A stretch of 64,000 bases of DNA from Stylophora pistillata (lineage: Eukaryota), in the NCBI RefSeq assembly GCF_002571385.2, contig NW_019217789.1, positions 656,916-720,915 of the forward strand. Direction: 5' to 3'. The stretch's first letter is position 1; each line of letters opens with the position of its first letter. The notes beneath the pieces are model-generated. The model saw only the letters and a program-made list of their open reading frames with translations, searched no databases and was not told the DNA's origin. Positions 12,299 to 40,387 of the stretch are shown piece by piece. Both the position numbers and the translations under genes were made by a program.

Positions 12299-12386
12299 AT
12301 GGAAAATATACCTTTGCTAACCGCCTCATCGCTTCTCTTTATTTGGGTGCTTACGACGAATCATCACTGTGCCTCAGCTACGCAAG
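12299..12386 (+). CDS. Gene B signal-peptide exon
   Basis: MENIPLLTASSLLFIWVLTTNHHCASATQ: hydrophobic core plus ASA cleavage-like site; phase-1 donor GTCAGT; upstream acceptor (CCCACAG ending 12284) implies a 5' UTR intron. Confidence 0.75.
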
Positions 12387-39300: not shown

Positions 39301-40387
39301 AGGAACGTCATACAGCTTGAAACAAAGTAGAAAAAAAAGGTTACTAAGTCACTTGTATTCTTGCTCATTAGAAATGTGACTCGCCTGGCGTGCCATTTAA
39401 TGACAGGTTGCGGCATTGAACGTTGATTTGCTTTAAAGTATAGCATAGGCATTTCTTAATTTCTTCTCAAAGTCCGCATTACATTCCTTTAGTCGATTTT
39501 ATTACTTTGCAGGTCTATTACCTAAGTTGGTTAGGAAAATTCCAAAAACTTAGTGTAAACCTATGATCAAAACGCACTTGAAAGGGGCTATCAGTGAAGA
39601 GAGCATCACTTCGAGCAAAAAGTGTCACACAATGCCCATTTGGCCGGAACTTCTGATCTCACACGAGGTGAAGAGACCATCTGAGAACGGGAAAAGTCAA
39701 CAGAACTTTAGATTGAGTGTGCCTCGCAGCCATGCAGTTCTTAGTTAGCATTGACAAACTTGATAACGTATTACTTTCAAAGTTGTCTTTTTGCACGGAA
39801 AATGAATAGATGTAAAAGGTCCTTAAACTTTAGCTAAAAGTTTCAAGAAAACTGCGCCCTTAAATACACTGTAAATGTTTCTTAAGTAACCTTACTCACT
39901 TTATTTGTTCAGACGTGAGCCATCTAAGAATCAAATCCCGACCAGTGAAAAAAGGAGTACGGTATCAGCAAGACACAAGGCATGCATGAAGAATAAATTA
40001 GAGGGTAAAGCACCTGAAAACCTAATGGCAGGCACGAAACATGAGGCAGATTGTAGCTCACCAGCAAAGCAGAAGGGAGGAGCTACAAATGGAGCAAAGG
40101 GAATTCAACAAGTAAAGCAGAACGCATCCATGAAGAATGAAGTAGAGGGTATTGCATCAGCAAAGAAGAAAGGAAACTTGAAGAGTGACGTGAACAGTAA
40201 TACAAATACAAAGCAGAAGAAAGGCATGAGGAATAAAGCAGAGGGTAAAGCTTTACGAAAGCGAAGGGGAAGAATGGCAAATGAAGCAGAAGGTGTTGTG
40301 GCAGCCGAACGGATGGAAGGCACAAATTGTGACGTAAGGATTAAAAAACAGGCTGAGCAGAAGAAACACGAGTCCATGAACTGTTAA
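12299..40387 (+). CDS. Receptor gene B: SP-CUB-Ig-CUB-Ig-LRRNT-LRRx8-Cys-rich-about 9 TM-repeat tail (about 1568 aa, 22 coding exons seen)
   Basis: Exons 12299-12386, 13172-13328, 13553-13725, 16577-16807, 18955-19111, 19286-19458, 20097-20321, 20745-20862, 21280-21351, 26975-27046, 28001-28072, 31199-31270, 31654-31725, 32685-32756, 33195-33269, 33741-33815, 34276-34347, 34919-35100, 35490-35615, 36247-37791, 38684-39086, 39913-40387. They sum to 4707 nt, in frame, all GT-AG. Linkage across the N-gap at 21404-22114 is inferred. Confidence 0.82.
13172..13725 (+). CDS. Gene B CUB domain 1 (two exons)
   Basis: GCG...LKSPGYPDKFYPSNMDCVY...IYFDYFQL / FDYVEI...GTFCG...IRFHSDSIVQKRGFSLLF, matching the CUB consensus. 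Confidence 0.9.
13766..16198 (+). mobile_element. Degenerate L2/CR1-clade LINE (endonuclease remnant plus RT), intronic
   Basis: LIDNIF and SDH endonuclease motifs; YRPISLL, QYGFR, DLRKAFDTVNH, GVPQ.SVLG.LLFLIYVND, LFADD and KYLGV RT motifs with frameshifts and stops; internal deletion near 14330; 3' stem-loop 16108-16140, AATAAA at 16174, (TTGTAAAC)2 tail. Confidence 0.92.
16577..16807 (+). CDS. Gene B Ig-like domain 1
   Basis: PPNISMP...VTCLVTGSPP...EEGNYSCVVTNKYG Ig pattern; phase 1-1 exon; unusual GAG acceptor. Confidence 0.8.
17967..18204. mobile_element. PIF/Harbinger-type MITE
   Basis: TIRs GGCCGGGTTGTTCAAAGCTG / CAGCGTTCGAACAACTGGGCC, internal inverted TAACCCAGGGTTAG motifs, 3-bp TSD CTG (17964-17966, 18205-18207). 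Confidence 0.75.
18955..19458 (+). CDS. Gene B CUB domain 2 (two exons)
   Basis: [27 protein letters not shown] / FDFVEI...GKYCG...IRFHSDSFSSQTGFSMFF; exon sizes 157 and 173 nt, identical to CUB1. Confidence 0.9.
19654..19776. mobile_element. Truncated second copy of the 8301 palindromic element
   Basis: Near-identical to about 8301-8423 (AACAAATGG...CTAGCTTCTTGAG), then truncated. Confidence 0.85.
20097..20321 (+). CDS. Gene B Ig-like domain 2
   Basis: VKCSVTGSLP...KEGNFSCVATSNYG; phase 1-1 exon, paralogous to 16577-16807. Confidence 0.85.
20745..20862 (+). CDS. Gene B LRRNT-like cap exon
   Basis: DCRPTCSL...LSCVNVTDLHLRDCLPTNIDSL; strong polypyrimidine acceptor; phase 1-2, linking Ig to the LRR exons. 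Confidence 0.75.
21280..33815 (+). CDS. Gene B array of eight single-LRR exons (72 or 75 nt, phase 2-2)
   Basis: For example NLPSNGVRSFPSGLLDKLTLLRVL, DISSNAISHVPEGLFFNLTRLEYL, DLSSNAMGSLPGRAFVKLERLRFL, YLSSNTIGSLPKGVFDKLTSLEHL, DLSSNEISSLPGGVFAKLTFLWFL, FLSGNNLTRIPSRAFFYMYQWRII; typical-class LRR consensus. Confidence 0.88.
21391..25102 (-). mobile_element. TTAA-targeting DNA transposon, Sola3-like (Kolobok is the alternative), with decayed ORF
   Basis: TTAA at 21387-21390 and 25103-25106; termini GAGGCTGTCTCT / AGAGACAACCTC (11/12 inverted match); - strand Cys/His-rich ORF 23743-24171 (ICEKHR..MGKNWR...CQYPLH) and a stop-interrupted ORF-like segment at 22115-22460; N-gap immediately inside the left end. 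Confidence 0.7.
26081..26119. repeat. Tandem repeat (GACAAAAATGTGC)x3
   Basis: Three direct 13-bp copies. Confidence 0.9.
26162..26233 (+). pseudogene. Degenerate LRR pseudo-exon
   Basis: Exactly 72 nt, phase 2-2, AG at 26160-26161 and GT at 26234-26235; VLSLKAINSLPEKVFPKLARGYD; weak splice context and lost LRR consensus residues. Confidence 0.6.
26263..26712. other. Duplicated segment (equals about 27529-27978); probable alternative haplotype at a contig join
   Basis: About 450 bp identical except G26511/A27777; ends at the single N at 26713, after which 26211-26262 is repeated. Confidence 0.8.
29267..29949 (+). mobile_element. 5'-truncated L2/CR1-type LINE 3' end
   Basis: Translates to HAIPFF..LMYDI..APSNISNLF..VHSYGTRSS..FSRVGVRIWN (same region as 15590-15969); stem-loop 29854-29893; AATAAA plus (CT)n tail; 11-bp TSD TCTAATCATAA at 29256-29266 and 29950-29960. 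Confidence 0.88.
32985..33160. repeat. Degenerate trinucleotide (GAC/GAT/AAC) simple repeat
   Basis: Runs such as GACGATGACGATGATG and AACAACGAAGACGG within an intron. Confidence 0.6.
34073..34202 (+). mobile_element. tRNA-derived SINE fragment (A-box region deleted)
   Basis: B-box-like GGATTCAAATCCC at 34111-34123 in context GTATCGCAGAGGTCATG...CCTGAATTTTTT; resembles SINE-like repeats I recall from coral genomes (recognition, not searched). Confidence 0.6.
36247..37791 (+). CDS. Gene B large exon: Cys-rich module plus multi-pass membrane domain
   Basis: ORF 36291-37832, colinear with 3245-4771; acceptor TTTTAACAG ending 36246, donor GTAAGG at 37792. Confidence 0.93.
39913..40387 (+). CDS. 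Gene B terminal exon, Lys-rich 16-aa repeat tail
   Basis: Phase-2 join AA|A from donor GTGAGT at 39087 to acceptor TTGTTCAG; ORF 39905-40387; eight 16-aa units at 39977-40360. Confidence 0.75.

What the first reader, a model, noticed from the sequence alone, without database searches (positions are those of the whole stretch)
12299..40387. Apparently uncharacterised modular receptor: CUB-Ig-CUB-Ig-LRR-Cys-rich ectodomain on an approximately 9 TM domain
Seen: 22 exons splice into one frame of about 1568 aa that joins three recognition-domain classes (CUB, Ig, LRR) through CxxG[TF/SY] Cys-rich repeats to a non-GPCR multi-pass domain and a repeat tail. I do not recognise this architecture from any characterised animal protein. 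It occurs in tandem, with evidence of module gain (CUB-Ig duplication), decay (pseudo-exon), deletion (haplotype) and tail loss. Inference: best candidate for an undescribed variable recognition-receptor system (immunity, symbiosis or allorecognition) in an anthozoan.
Basis: partly seen in the sequence, partly recalled or inferred. Interest (0 to 1): 0.85.

Follow-up and report, generated by a model that had tools for sequence, protein, structure and literature searches.

The report
Coral CUB-Ig-LRR receptor with nine-helix core
This is a real 22-exon coral gene for a large surface protein that joins CUB, Ig and leucine-rich-repeat domains to a nine-helix membrane core; it belongs to a big, unstudied animal family whose membrane core resembles that of the parasite "CRMP" contact sensors, so it is interesting but not one of a kind.

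Summary
I rebuilt the same 22 exons (12299-40387, + strand). They use GT-AG sites, keep one frame and sum to 4707 nt, which is 1568 aa.

The order is signal peptide, CUB-Ig-CUB-Ig, LRRNT, nine one-repeat LRR cassette exons, Ephrin-receptor-like Cys repeats ending in DUF7630, a 9-helix membrane domain, and a cytoplasmic repeat tail.

The N gap (21404-22114) lies in an intron between two 72-nt, same-phase LRR exons, so the frame does not depend on it. RNA contigs gave no depth on those exons, so splicing across the gap is unproven.

One gene is still likely:
- The tandem upstream paralogue has (CUB-Ig)x3-LRR-Cys-TM with no gap there and is annotated as one 1505-aa protein, misnamed "Tolloid-like protein 2".
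- Oculina RefSeq proteins are colinear with all exon classes.

The architecture is not unique. There are about 30 or more loci in this Stylophora pistillata genome and hundreds of coral proteins, plus sponge, jellyfish and sea-cucumber members. All are labelled "uncharacterized".

The core looks like the CRMP / Dictyostelium LRR / fungal TRP-like (PF06011) group. No solved structure matches it. dN/dS is below 1 throughout, and I found no evidence for an immune role.

Verdict: a new variant of a known kind. Other first-reader notes of this scan already flagged parts of this window and a likely relative elsewhere.

The parts
12299..12386 (+). Exon 1: start codon and signal peptide (MENIPLLTASSLLFIWVLTTNHHCASATQ/G). 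The donor is GTCAGT, phase 1.
   Evidence: The ORF was read. The donor position matches the paralogue's SP-like exon, which is 40% identical and has donor GTATGC at the same codon. The C at donor position +3 is unusual.
13172..13328 (+). CUB1, first half-exon (phase 1 to 2)
   Evidence: Pfam CUB E=8e-8, profile positions 9-62.
13553..13725 (+). CUB1, second half-exon (phase 2 to 1)
   Evidence: Pfam CUB E=2e-9, profile positions 54-110. It is 81% identical to the paralogue's exon, with dN/dS 0.37.
16577..16807 (+). Ig1 exon (phase 1 to 1)
   Evidence: Ig_2 E=5e-4, below the cut-off. It is 60% identical to the paralogue's Ig exon, whose protein P0243 passes Ig_2 at 38.9 bits.
18955..19111 (+). 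CUB2, first half-exon
   Evidence: Pfam CUB E=3e-10. Direct repeat of CUB1a at 77-81% nt identity.
19286..19458 (+). CUB2, second half-exon
   Evidence: Pfam CUB E=3e-8. Direct repeat of CUB1b at 77% nt identity. dN/dS against CUB1b is 0.33.
20097..20321 (+). Ig2 exon
   Evidence: It has no Pfam hit of its own. It is 55% identical to Ig1 and 66% identical to the paralogue's third Ig exon.
20745..20862 (+). LRRNT-like Cys cap exon (phase 1 to 2)
   Evidence: Its sequence is CRPTCSLST...VLSCVNV...DC. It has a 41%-identical counterpart in the paralogue, directly before that gene's LRR array.
21280..21351 (+). LRR cassette 1 (72 nt, phase 2 to 2), the last exon left of the gap
   Evidence: The donor GTACGT lies 52 nt before the gap.
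21404..22114 (.). Assembly gap (711 N). It lies inside the intron after LRR1. I did not fill it.
   Evidence: The flanks are intron on the left and a transcribed repeat on the right.
26162..26233 (+). Decayed LRR pseudo-exon. It has lost the Asn and the C-terminal Leu pattern, and its splice sites are poor (..gatgag / gtttac).
26975..27046 (+). LRR cassette 2. It lies in the 757-nt segment C, which is present in only one of the two joined sequence versions.
28001..28072 (+). LRR cassette 3
31199..31270 (+). LRR cassette 4
   Evidence: LRR_8 E=4e-4.
31654..31725 (+). LRR cassette 5
32685..32756 (+). LRR cassette 6
   Evidence: It is 67% identical to a paralogue exon.
33195..33269 (+). LRR cassette 7 (75 nt)
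   Evidence: It is 62% identical to a paralogue exon.
33741..33815 (+). Degenerate LRR-like exon 8 (75 nt)
   Evidence: It is 62% identical to window 919-990 of the paralogue.
34276..34347 (+). Degenerate LRR-like or linker exon 9 (72 nt)
   Evidence: It is 62% identical to window 1607-1669.
34919..35100 (+). Linker plus the first Cys-rich repeat (C..C..GTF...C.EC.PG), phase 2 to 1
   Evidence: TNFR_ELAPOR1_6th E=2e-6 and a weak Ephrin_rec_like hit. The junction is the same as in P0244.
35490..35615 (+). Second and third Cys-rich repeats (Ephrin_rec_like)
   Evidence: Ephrin_rec_like 22.6 bits against a cut-off of 23.1. It is 79% identical to the paralogue, with dN/dS 0.10.
36247..37791 (+). 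One 1545-nt exon holding further Cys repeats including DUF7630 (window 36516-36641), the nine membrane helices, and an extracellular Cys-rich beta hairpin between helices 4 and 5
   Evidence: (best homologue E=2e-202). dN/dS against the paralogue is 0.25.
38684..39086 (+). Cytoplasmic tail exon 1. The donor GTGAGT overlaps the in-frame stop at 39088, so a short unspliced C-terminus is also possible.
   Evidence: It is 45-54% identical to the tails of Montipora, Oculina and paralogue proteins.
39913..40387 (+). Cytoplasmic tail exon 2: about four degenerate Lys/Glu-rich repeats (MKNxxEGxA) up to the stop codon
   Evidence: The same tail1-to-repeat-tail splice is in the annotated third paralogue P0244, which has a 375-aa tail of 16-residue repeats.
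1..5594 (+). 3' part of the tandem upstream paralogue (last LRR-like exons, Cys repeats, TM exon 3200-4750, tail exon 5238-5594). This is protein P0243.

Best explanation
The stretch is one expressed, intact protein-coding gene of the coral Stylophora pistillata. It has 22 exons and encodes 1568 aa.

The product is a surface protein with its N-terminus outside and its C-terminus inside the cell. In order it has a signal peptide, two CUB-Ig modules, an LRR cap and at least nine LRRs. A stalk of Ephrin-receptor-like Cys repeats ending in DUF7630 follows, then a nine-helix membrane domain, then a cytoplasmic Lys/Glu-rich repeat tail.

It belongs to a large animal family with the core LRR, Cys repeats, DUF7630 and 9 TM. 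The family is found in cnidarians, a sponge and an echinoderm, and has about 30 or more loci in this genome. Lineages have added or lost N-terminal modules such as CUB, Ig, MAM or SRCR.

The conserved core (Cys repeats plus 9 TM) looks like the one in the eukaryote-wide group. That group holds the apicomplexan and ciliate CRMPs and Dictyostelium LRR proteins, and more distantly the fungal TRP-like / Flc proteins (PF06011).

Inferred mechanism: the variable ectodomain binds an extracellular ligand or a contacting surface. The nine-helix core passes this on to the cytoplasm. By analogy this would be through Ca2+ flux or by triggering regulated secretion. The repeat tail may recruit partners.

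Shown here: the gene structure, domain content, topology model, family size and spread, and purifying selection. Inferred only: one transcript across the gap, ligand binding, and the signalling output.
For: Gene model:
- All 22 exons have GT-AG borders and matching phases, and sum to 4707 nt.
- Five junctions are the same as in annotated paralogue proteins.
- Every exon class has a counterpart in the paralogue at 40-81% aa identity with dN/dS 0.08-0.71.

One gene:
- The upstream paralogue has SP, (CUB-Ig)x3, LRRNT, about 16 LRRs, Cys repeats and TM, with no gap in the matching place. It is annotated as one 1505-aa protein.
- Oculina RefSeq proteins P0198, P0200 and P0215, and also P0205, are colinear with our exons on both sides of the gap.
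- Montipora and Acropora have CUB-Ig-LRR-TM proteins.
- No second signal peptide, LRR cap or TM exon lies between 22115 and 26900.

Expression: 30-44% of the TM exon's sampled words are in poly-A RNA-seq runs of the species. Unique intron stretches had zero depth in such runs.

Topology: the AF2 models have pLDDT 87.9 and 87.7, with nine long helices. Six are strongly hydrophobic and three are amphipathic.

Family:
- 4006 clusters at 50% identity match at E<=1e-3.
- 834 clusters at 90% identity match at E<=1e-100.
- This genome has 59 exon-level matches (about 30 or more loci) and 25 DUF7630 matches, all co-located with them.

Core kinship:
- NCBI names for homologues that are 59% identical.
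- The CRMP core is described as EGF-like/ERC repeats plus 9 TM, N-terminus out and C-terminus in (PMC9815656, PMC9670195).
- The sea-cucumber member P0062 passes Pfam PF06011 at 36.3 bits against a cut-off of 28.5. 7 of 40 relatives hit it weakly.
Against: - No RNA read or contig was seen on LRR1 or LRR2, so no splice across the gap was seen.
- No annotated protein of this exact locus turned up.
- The protein itself is under the Pfam cut-offs for DUF7630 (19.5-25.7 bits against 27) and Ephrin_rec_like. It has no PF06011 hit, and no locus of this genome hits PF06011.
- I could not align it directly with a CRMP. A search aimed at CRMP-sized proteins found none with a name.
- No solved structure resembles the core, so a channel or signalling role has no structural backing.
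- Exon 1's donor is GTCAGT, and the last exon depends on a donor that overlaps a stop codon.
Confidence: 0.6

Rival explanations
1. The family would be a variable non-self recognition system for immunity, symbiont uptake or allorecognition. Tandem duplication, module shuffling and exon-level presence/absence polymorphism would generate different specificities.
For: - The family is multi-copy, with three copies on this contig.
- The three copies differ in module number: 2 against 3 CUB-Ig modules, about 9 against about 16 LRRs, and repeat tails of 0, 158 and 375 aa.
- The A-B / N / A-C-B join suggests two sequence versions that differ by the LRR2 exon.
- One-repeat, same-phase LRR exons would allow in-frame gain, loss or skipping.
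- CUB, Ig and LRR domains are common in recognition proteins (established knowledge).
Against: - dN/dS is below 1 in every exon compared (0.08-0.71), with no excess in the Ig or CUB exons.
- There are no expression, challenge or population data.
- The join could be an assembly artefact or a true duplication.
- The same core is conserved from sponge to sea cucumber, and Oculina has colinear CUB-Ig-LRR proteins. This fits a conserved physiological role as well as an immune one.
Confidence: 0.15
2. The nine-helix domain would be a channel or carrier of the fungal Flc / TRP-like kind, acting in Ca2+ or small-molecule homeostasis. The large ectodomain would only anchor or localise it, for example to matrix or to the calcifying surface, and would not sense a specific ligand.
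For: - PF06011 matches in relatives: P0062 over the cut-off, and P0241, P0251 and P0056 under it.
- Fungal PF06011 proteins regulate Ca2+ homeostasis (PMC8618638, PMC9600462, abstracts only).
- Conserved polar residues lie in or at membrane helices: K166, Q173 and W392-E393..E396..R399-K400.
Against: - This protein and all loci of this genome miss PF06011.
- The fungal N-terminal ML-like domain is absent.
- Ectodomains built of CUB, Ig and LRR modules whose numbers change point to binding rather than mere anchoring.
Confidence: 0.15
3. There would be two genes joined by scaffolding. One would be a secreted CUB-Ig-CUB-Ig-LRR protein ending near the gap. The other would be a separate LRR-Cys-9TM gene starting right of the gap.
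For: - The gap lies between the two halves.
- RNA contigs show nothing on LRR1 or LRR2.
- Many family members are annotated without CUB or Ig.
- A transcribed repeat fills 22115-25250.
Against: - The left half ends in an LRR exon with an open phase-2 donor and no stop or terminal exon.
- The right half has no signal-peptide or LRR-cap exon.
- The ungapped tandem paralogue and four Oculina proteins have the joined architecture.
- The phases match across the gap.
Confidence: 0.1

Closest known systems
Unnamed animal family 'LRR, Ephrin_rec_like, DUF7630 (PF24633), 9 TM' (UniProt 'DUF7630 domain-containing protein'; NCBI 'uncharacterized protein'). Examples: Stylophora P0243, Oculina P0198/P0200/P0205/P0215, Montipora XP_068730350, Acropora muricata P0250, Nematostella A7RJF1 and A7SVP3.
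   Same: - The whole architecture matches. The TM exon is 42-79% identical to these proteins.
- The Cys stalk, the tail exon and the exon junctions are the same.
- CUB-Ig-LRR N-terminal regions occur in several corals.
   Different: - The number of CUB-Ig modules (2), LRRs (9 or more) and tail repeats is specific to this gene.
- This locus has no protein record that I could find.
- No member has a known function.
Cysteine repeat modular proteins (CRMPs) of Apicomplexa and Tetrahymena (PfCRMP1-4, TgCRMPa/b, TtCRMP1/2)
   Same: - Both have a large modular ectodomain with adhesive domains, then EGF-like / Ephrin-receptor-like Cys repeats, directly followed by nine membrane helices and a cytoplasmic C-terminus. 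This is the CRMP 'conserved core' (PMC9815656, PMC9670195).
- NCBI names Oculina homologues that are 59% identical to our TM exon 'cysteine repeat modular protein A-like'.
   Different: - The ectodomain modules differ: CUB, Ig and LRR here, against Kringle, MAR, lectin and others in CRMPs.
- This is an animal multigene family, against 2-4 genes per parasite.
- I did not test sequence homology directly.
- CRMPs work as an A/B pair in rhoptry or mucocyst discharge. No such role or pairing is shown here.
Dictyostelium LRR-containing multi-pass proteins (e.g. DDB_G0281931; Q86I19 as named in PMC9815656)
   Same: - Both have LRRs plus a Cys-rich stalk plus a 9-TM core.
- NCBI names Acropora and Montipora family members after DDB_G0281931.
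- The CRMP paper reports that the Dictyostelium 9-TM models resemble those of CRMPs.
   Different: - They have no CUB or Ig modules.
- They are uncharacterised too.
- I did not align them here.
Fungal TRP-like / Flc family, Pfam PF06011 (S. cerevisiae Flc1-3, S. pombe Pkd2, A. nidulans TrpR, C. neoformans Flc1)
   Same: - Both are multi-pass domains of about nine helices.
- Helices 3-9 of relatives align to PF06011 profile positions 142-411. P0062 scores 36.3 bits, over the cut-off.
   Different: - This protein and this genome's copies do not reach PF06011.
- The fungal proteins carry an ML-like N-terminal domain instead of the LRR and Cys stalk.
- It is not a canonical six-helix tetrameric TRP channel.
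Adhesion GPCRs and LRR-Ig single-pass receptors (LRIG, LINGO, AMIGO; Toll-like receptors)
   Same: The logic is the same: modular adhesive ectodomains (CUB, Ig, LRR) on a membrane signalling part.
   Different: - It has nine helices, not seven or one.
- It has no GAIN/GPS, TIR or kinase domain.
- Foldseek and VIA-align found no GPCR match of weight (probability at most 0.44, TM-score at most 0.2).
Tolloid / BMP1 (the name given to the paralogue P0243)
   Same: Only the CUB domains.
   Different: It has no astacin protease domain and no EGF-CUB order. The name is a misnomer from CUB similarity.

Membership tests
Animal LRR-Cys-DUF7630-9TM family | Homology of the Cys-stalk and 9-TM exon to family members | tested here: met
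   phmmer gave E=2e-202 to Oculina and 2e-134 to Montipora P0008, with 207 clusters at E<=1e-30. 834 clusters at 90% identity matched at E<=1e-100.
Animal LRR-Cys-DUF7630-9TM family | DUF7630 (PF24633) module directly before the first membrane helix | tested here: inconclusive
   This protein scores 19.5-25.7 bits against a cut-off of 27, at the right place, residues 76-117 of the exon. 32 of 40 relatives match at E<=0.01, and 21 loci of this genome pass the cut-off.
Animal LRR-Cys-DUF7630-9TM family | LRR array N-terminal to Ephrin_rec_like Cys repeats | tested here: met
   There are nine LRR cassette exons. Ephrin_rec_like scores 22.6 bits (cut-off 23.1) and TNFR_ELAPOR1 28.2 bits. Relatives pass both.
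CRMP (Apicomplexa, ciliates) | Conserved core: EGF-like/ERC Cys repeats followed by nine membrane helices, N-terminus outside, C-terminus inside | tested here: met
   The AF2 models show nine helices after the Cys repeats. The core definition is taken from PMC9815656. The topology here is inferred, not measured.
CRMP (Apicomplexa, ciliates) | Significant sequence or profile similarity of the core to PfCRMP, TgCRMP or TtCRMP | not tested
The search with the 2509-aa relative P0123 returned no named CRMP. The only support is NCBI's name for Oculina homologues and Atlas leads to ciliate clusters.
CRMP (Apicomplexa, ciliates) | Pairing of two paralogues through the membrane domains, and a role in regulated exocytosis | not testable with these tools
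   This needs experiments. See Tried and rejected for the single complex job, which gave no verdict.
Pfam PF06011 TRP-like (fungal Flc / Pkd2 type) | Match to PF06011 at or above its cut-off (28.5 bits) | tested here: not met
   This exon has no hit at E<=0.1, and this genome has none. Among relatives, P0062 scores 36.3 bits (pass), while P0241 (25.9), P0251 (26.2) and P0056 (20.5) are under the cut-off.
Pfam PF06011 TRP-like (fungal Flc / Pkd2 type) | N-terminal ML-like (TRP_N) domain | tested here: not met
   No such Pfam hit appeared in any exon or relative scanned.
GPCR (rhodopsin, secretin, adhesion) | Seven-helix fold; for adhesion GPCRs also a GAIN/GPS domain | tested here: not met
Tolloid / BMP1 metalloproteases | Astacin protease domain | tested here: not met
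   Pfam on P0243 and on all window exons found CUB but no Astacin domain.

The most novel reading that the evidence does not exclude
Cnidarians and some other marine animals may have kept and greatly expanded the CRMP-type contact sensor known from Apicomplexa and ciliates. In this reading the ectodomains, shuffled from CUB, Ig, LRR, MAM and SRCR modules, recognise prey, symbionts, microbes or neighbouring colonies. The nine-helix core, a fold with no solved structure, would then trigger Ca2+-dependent regulated secretion such as cnidocyst, mucus or gland-cell discharge. Tandem paralogues and exon-level LRR presence/absence would supply different specificities.
Probability: 0.12. Interest if true: 0.85.

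Novelty: new variant of a known kind. Interest (0 to 1): 0.55.

Why it matters
Corals have many surface receptors of unknown use. How they sense symbionts, microbes, prey and neighbours is an open question.

This gene belongs to one of their larger unstudied receptor-like families. The family has about 30 or more loci here, hundreds of protein clusters across corals, and members in sponge, jellyfish and sea cucumber. Its membrane domain has no solved structural relative.

If the link to CRMPs holds, a sensor thought to be special to parasites and ciliates would be an old eukaryotic device that animals decorated with their own binding domains. That gives concrete tests: which cells express it, whether it gates Ca2+ or secretion, and what it binds.

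There is also a practical point. Database names such as 'Tolloid-like protein 2', 'Carboxypeptidase N subunit 2' and 'LRR-containing protein 15' for family members are misleading, and can distort coral expression studies.

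Tried and rejected
**RNA across the gap.** I laid three RNA contig runs and one raw-read run on 21051-27050. There was no depth on LRR1 or LRR2, so the result says nothing either way. The depth at 22115-25250 is 95-99% alike with many differences, which means a repeat transcribed from other copies. One RNA contig runs on into the gap.

**Annotated protein of this locus.** No fetched protein matched window positions above 6500 at 85% identity or more.

**Reaching CRMPs by sequence.** The search with P0123, region 1780-2400, found only unnamed relatives. 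The Atlas gave leads only.

**Fold searches.**
- Foldseek against the PDB gave nothing at E<=0.001 for either model.
- A profile search of PDB sequences found nothing.

**Complex prediction.** I tested our TM core against the tandem paralogue's. The result was no verdict (score 0.03), so it is not evidence for or against pairing.

**PF06011 in this genome.** None found.

**Literature.** I found no paper for DDB_G0281931 or DUF7630, nor for GCC2/GCC3 with cnidarian LRR proteins, nor for CRMP together with cnidarians. A 'tolloid-like protein 2' in a skeletal-proteome preprint appears to be another protein, a two-beta-sandwich acidic protein (XP_022799127.1); I did not compare the sequences.

**Rejected readings.** GPCR, canonical TRP channel, Tolloid protease and pseudogene. 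The frames are intact and dN/dS is 0.25 on the TM exon.

All searches were exon by exon, by reference.

Full report
**Where we are.** The window is G000:C6:656916-720915 of a 398-Mb assembly in 5513 contigs. Contig C6 is 2,077,585 bases long. Two Stylophora pistillata proteins found later, P0243 and P0244, lie on a contig of that same length, and both map at 99-100% identity to C6 sequence fetched from this genome. The genome is therefore the stony coral S. pistillata.

**Checking the observation.** Open frames on the + strand between 12.3 and 40.4 kb carry the stated domains.
- Four half-exons hit Pfam CUB above its cut-off, at E 3e-10 to 8e-8.
- Ig1 hits Ig_2, I-set and Ig_3 below the cut-offs. 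Ig2 has no hit of its own but is 55% identical to Ig1.
- Two exons hit Ephrin_rec_like, TNFR_ELAPOR1 and DUF7631 weakly.
- One 1.5-kb exon carries DUF7630 followed by a long hydrophobic region.

I placed the splice sites by hand. They give 22 exons with GT-AG borders and matching phases:
- a signal-peptide exon (12299-12386);
- CUB1 in two exons, then Ig1;
- CUB2 in two exons, then Ig2;
- an LRR cap;
- nine LRR or LRR-like cassettes of 72 or 75 nt, all phase 2 to 2;
- two Cys-repeat exons;
- the Cys/TM exon (36247-37791);
- two tail exons.

I only added lengths.

**The gap.** The 711 N at 21404-22114 lie 52 nt after the GTACGT donor of LRR1 (21280-21351), so they are in an intron. The next coding exon is LRR2 at 26975. 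All LRR exons are 72 or 75 nt long and in the same phase, so any number of LRR exons hidden in the gap would leave the frame unchanged.

Three poly-A or random RNA contig runs and one raw-read run, laid on 21051-27050, gave zero depth on LRR1 and next to none on LRR2. The splice across the gap is therefore not shown. The depth at 22115-25250 comes from contigs only 95-99% alike, which means a repeat transcribed elsewhere. One such contig runs into the gap.

Indirect evidence for one gene is good.
- (a) The left part ends in an open phase-2 donor with no stop or terminal exon. The right part has no signal-peptide or cap exon.
- (b) The tandem upstream paralogue was fetched from C6:616916-656915 and continues into window 1-5594. 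It has an SP-like exon, three CUB-Ig modules, an LRR cap, about 16 LRR cassettes, Cys repeats, the TM exon and a tail, with no gap in that span. It is annotated as one 1505-aa protein, P0243.
- (c) Oculina patagonica proteins P0198, P0200 and P0215 (RefSeq) and P0205 align in order to CUB, Ig, LRR, Cys, TM and tail exons on both sides of the gap.
- (d) Five junctions of our model are the same as in P0243 and P0244.

I put the odds of one gene at about 0.85-0.9.

**Is it a live gene?** All frames are intact.
- Between our gene and the paralogue, dN/dS is 0.25 on the TM exon (514 codons), 0.10 on Cys2, 0.22 on tail1, and 0.08-0.71 on the CUB and Ig exons.
- Between the two CUB-Ig modules within the gene it is 0.33-0.38.
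- 30-44% of the TM exon's sampled 31-mers occur in poly-A RNA-seq runs of the species.
- Unique intron stretches had zero depth in such runs, which argues against DNA carry-over.

**The membrane domain.** AlphaFold2 with 40-43 homologues gave confident models: pLDDT 87.9 for the whole exon and 87.7 for the TM part alone, both with pTM 0.84.

After about 118 residues of disulfide-rich repeats come nine long helices. Six are strongly hydrophobic and three are amphipathic. A Cys-rich three-stranded sheet sits between helices 4 and 5. A conserved loop, ENYK..WYWE..E..RK, precedes helix 6. With nine helices the N-terminus is outside and the tail is cytoplasmic.

**The family.**
- The TM exon finds 4006 clusters at 50% identity with E<=1e-3, and 207 with E<=1e-30.
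- It finds 834 clusters at 90% identity with E<=1e-100.
- In this genome there are 59 exon-level matches at about 30 or more loci. About a dozen are full-length single exons without stops.
- 25 DUF7630 matches all sit at those loci.

Named members are all 'uncharacterized' or misnamed. They come from Stylophora, Pocillopora, Oculina, Porites, Montipora, Acropora, Actinia and Nematostella, from the scyphozoan Sanderia and the sponge Oscarella, and from the sea cucumber Apostichopus.

The common architecture is LRR, Ephrin_rec_like, DUF7630 and TM. The N-terminal additions vary:
- none;
- CUB;
- CUB plus Ig (several corals);
- Ig plus V-set (Acropora);
- MAM plus SRCR (Nematostella A7RJF1);
- HYR and TNFR in unnamed metagenome proteins.

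A quick maximum-likelihood tree of TM cores (48 rows, SH-aLRT support) groups our gene with the third C6 copy (97). It then adds the upstream copy (100), in a clade that holds only Stylophora rows. CUB- and Ig-bearing proteins are scattered among LRR-only and short models. Some short models may be truncated annotations, so I draw no order of events.

**The three copies on C6.**
- The upstream copy has 3 CUB-Ig modules, about 16 LRRs and no recognisable repeat tail.
- Ours has 2 modules, 9 or more LRRs and a 158-aa tail exon with about four degenerate repeats.
- The third copy lies about 155 kb away on the minus strand and is protein P0244. It shows one Ig exon, a cap, few LRRs, and a 375-aa tail of 16-residue KQKEGMKNAAECDAP-like repeats spliced to tail1 exactly as in our model.

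Our module 1 is closest to the paralogue's module 1 (CUB1b 81%). Our Ig2 is closest to its third Ig (66%). The CUB-Ig duplication is therefore probably older than the gene duplication, and one module was later gained or lost.

The decayed LRR exon at 26162-26233 is real. Around the single N at 26713 the sequence reads A-B, then N, then A-C-B. Here 26211-26263 equals 26714-26766 at 100%, and 26259-26712 equals 27524-27978 at 99.6%. The 757-nt segment C holds LRR2. This fits two haplotypes joined by the assembler, as another first-reader note says, but it could also be a true duplication.

**What it is like.** NCBI names Oculina homologues that are 59% identical to our TM exon 'cysteine repeat modular protein A-like'. 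It names Acropora and Montipora homologues 'putative leucine-rich repeat-containing protein DDB_G0281931'.

CRMPs are described as follows:
- They have a conserved core of two EGF-like / Ephrin-receptor-like modules plus nine membrane helices, with the N-terminus outside and the C-terminus inside.
- They form an A/B pair.
- They are needed for rhoptry discharge in Toxoplasma and for mucocyst exocytosis in Tetrahymena.
- They are proposed to be contact sensors.
- Their 9-TM models resemble those of Dictyostelium homologues (PMC9670195, PMC9815656).

Our protein meets the architectural definition.

More distantly, the sea-cucumber member P0062 aligns to our exon at E=2e-58 and passes Pfam PF06011, the fungal TRP-like / Flc family, at 36.3 bits. 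Seven of 40 relatives hit that family weakly. Our exon and this genome's copies do not. Fungal PF06011 proteins regulate Ca2+ homeostasis (PMC8618638, PMC9600462, abstracts only).

**How it most likely works.** Shown: a modular ectodomain on a conserved nine-helix core with a cytoplasmic tail, under purifying selection, in a large family. Inferred: the ectodomain binds a ligand or a contacting surface and the core signals inward. By analogy with CRMPs and PF06011 proteins, the output would be Ca2+ flux or regulated secretion.

**Novelty and score.** The gene is a new variant of a known kind. The family is in databases but, as far as the searchable literature shows, it is undescribed in animals. 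Its core appears to belong to a eukaryote-wide group with a few studied members.

It remains a good lead because of the family's size, the unsolved fold and the possible CRMP link.

Other first-reader notes of this scan flagged the LRR cassettes, the haplotype join and the paralogue's 9-TM domain in this window. One note flagged a beta-helix, Cys-rich, 9-TM pair elsewhere in the genome. I tested the first three here but not the last.

Noticed in passing
window 26211-27978: The sequence reads A-B, then a single N (26713), then A-C-B. 26211-26263 equals 26714-26766 (100%) and 26259-26712 equals 27524-27978 (99.6%). The 757-nt segment C carries LRR exon 2. This looks like two haplotypes joined by the assembler, differing by one in-frame LRR exon, or else a very recent duplication.
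   Followed up: partly
window 13766-15966 (+): A decayed non-LTR retrotransposon lies in the intron between CUB1 and Ig1. It has reverse-transcriptase pieces in shifted frames (RVT_1 E=5e-9 and 7e-5). It accounts for much of the 5.8-kb spacing between the two CUB-Ig modules.
   Followed up: partly
window 22115-25250: An intronic repeat is covered by RNA contigs that are only 95-99% alike, so they come from other copies. It includes a 150-aa minus-strand frame (23746-24195) with no Pfam match. One contig continues into the assembly gap, which I left unfilled.
   Followed up: partly
window 1-5594 and G000:C6:638580-656915: The tandem upstream paralogue is in the databases as 'Tolloid-like protein 2' (P0243) but has no astacin domain. 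It is a (CUB-Ig)x3, LRR, Cys, 9-TM protein. Other family members carry the names 'Carboxypeptidase N subunit 2' and 'Leucine-rich repeat-containing protein 15'. All are misnomers from partial domain similarity.
   Followed up: yes
G000:C6:about 500050-537450 (minus strand; loci L002, L033, L034, L037-L039): The third family copy on the same contig (P0244) has a 375-aa cytoplasmic tail of about twenty 16-residue repeats (KQKEGMKNAAECDAP-like). Tail length varies between the three paralogues: 0, 158 and 375 aa.
   Followed up: partly
window 39084-39092: The strong donor GTGAGT of tail exon 1 overlaps the in-frame stop codon TGA. Unspliced transcripts would give a short tail, and spliced ones would add the repeat tail. 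This could act as a built-in switch between two C-termini.
   Followed up: no
window 49640-64000 (+): The downstream neighbour looks like a receptor guanylyl cyclase. ANF_receptor hits at E=2e-26 at 49923-50408, and kinase-like and cyclase-like frames lie further on, read by eye. It runs off the window's end.
   Followed up: partly
window 12386-12392: Exon 1's only donor that agrees with the paralogue's junction is GTCAGT, with C at position +3, which is unusual. Other GT sites at 12368 and 12428 also keep the phase, so the exact end of exon 1 needs cDNA.
   Followed up: partly
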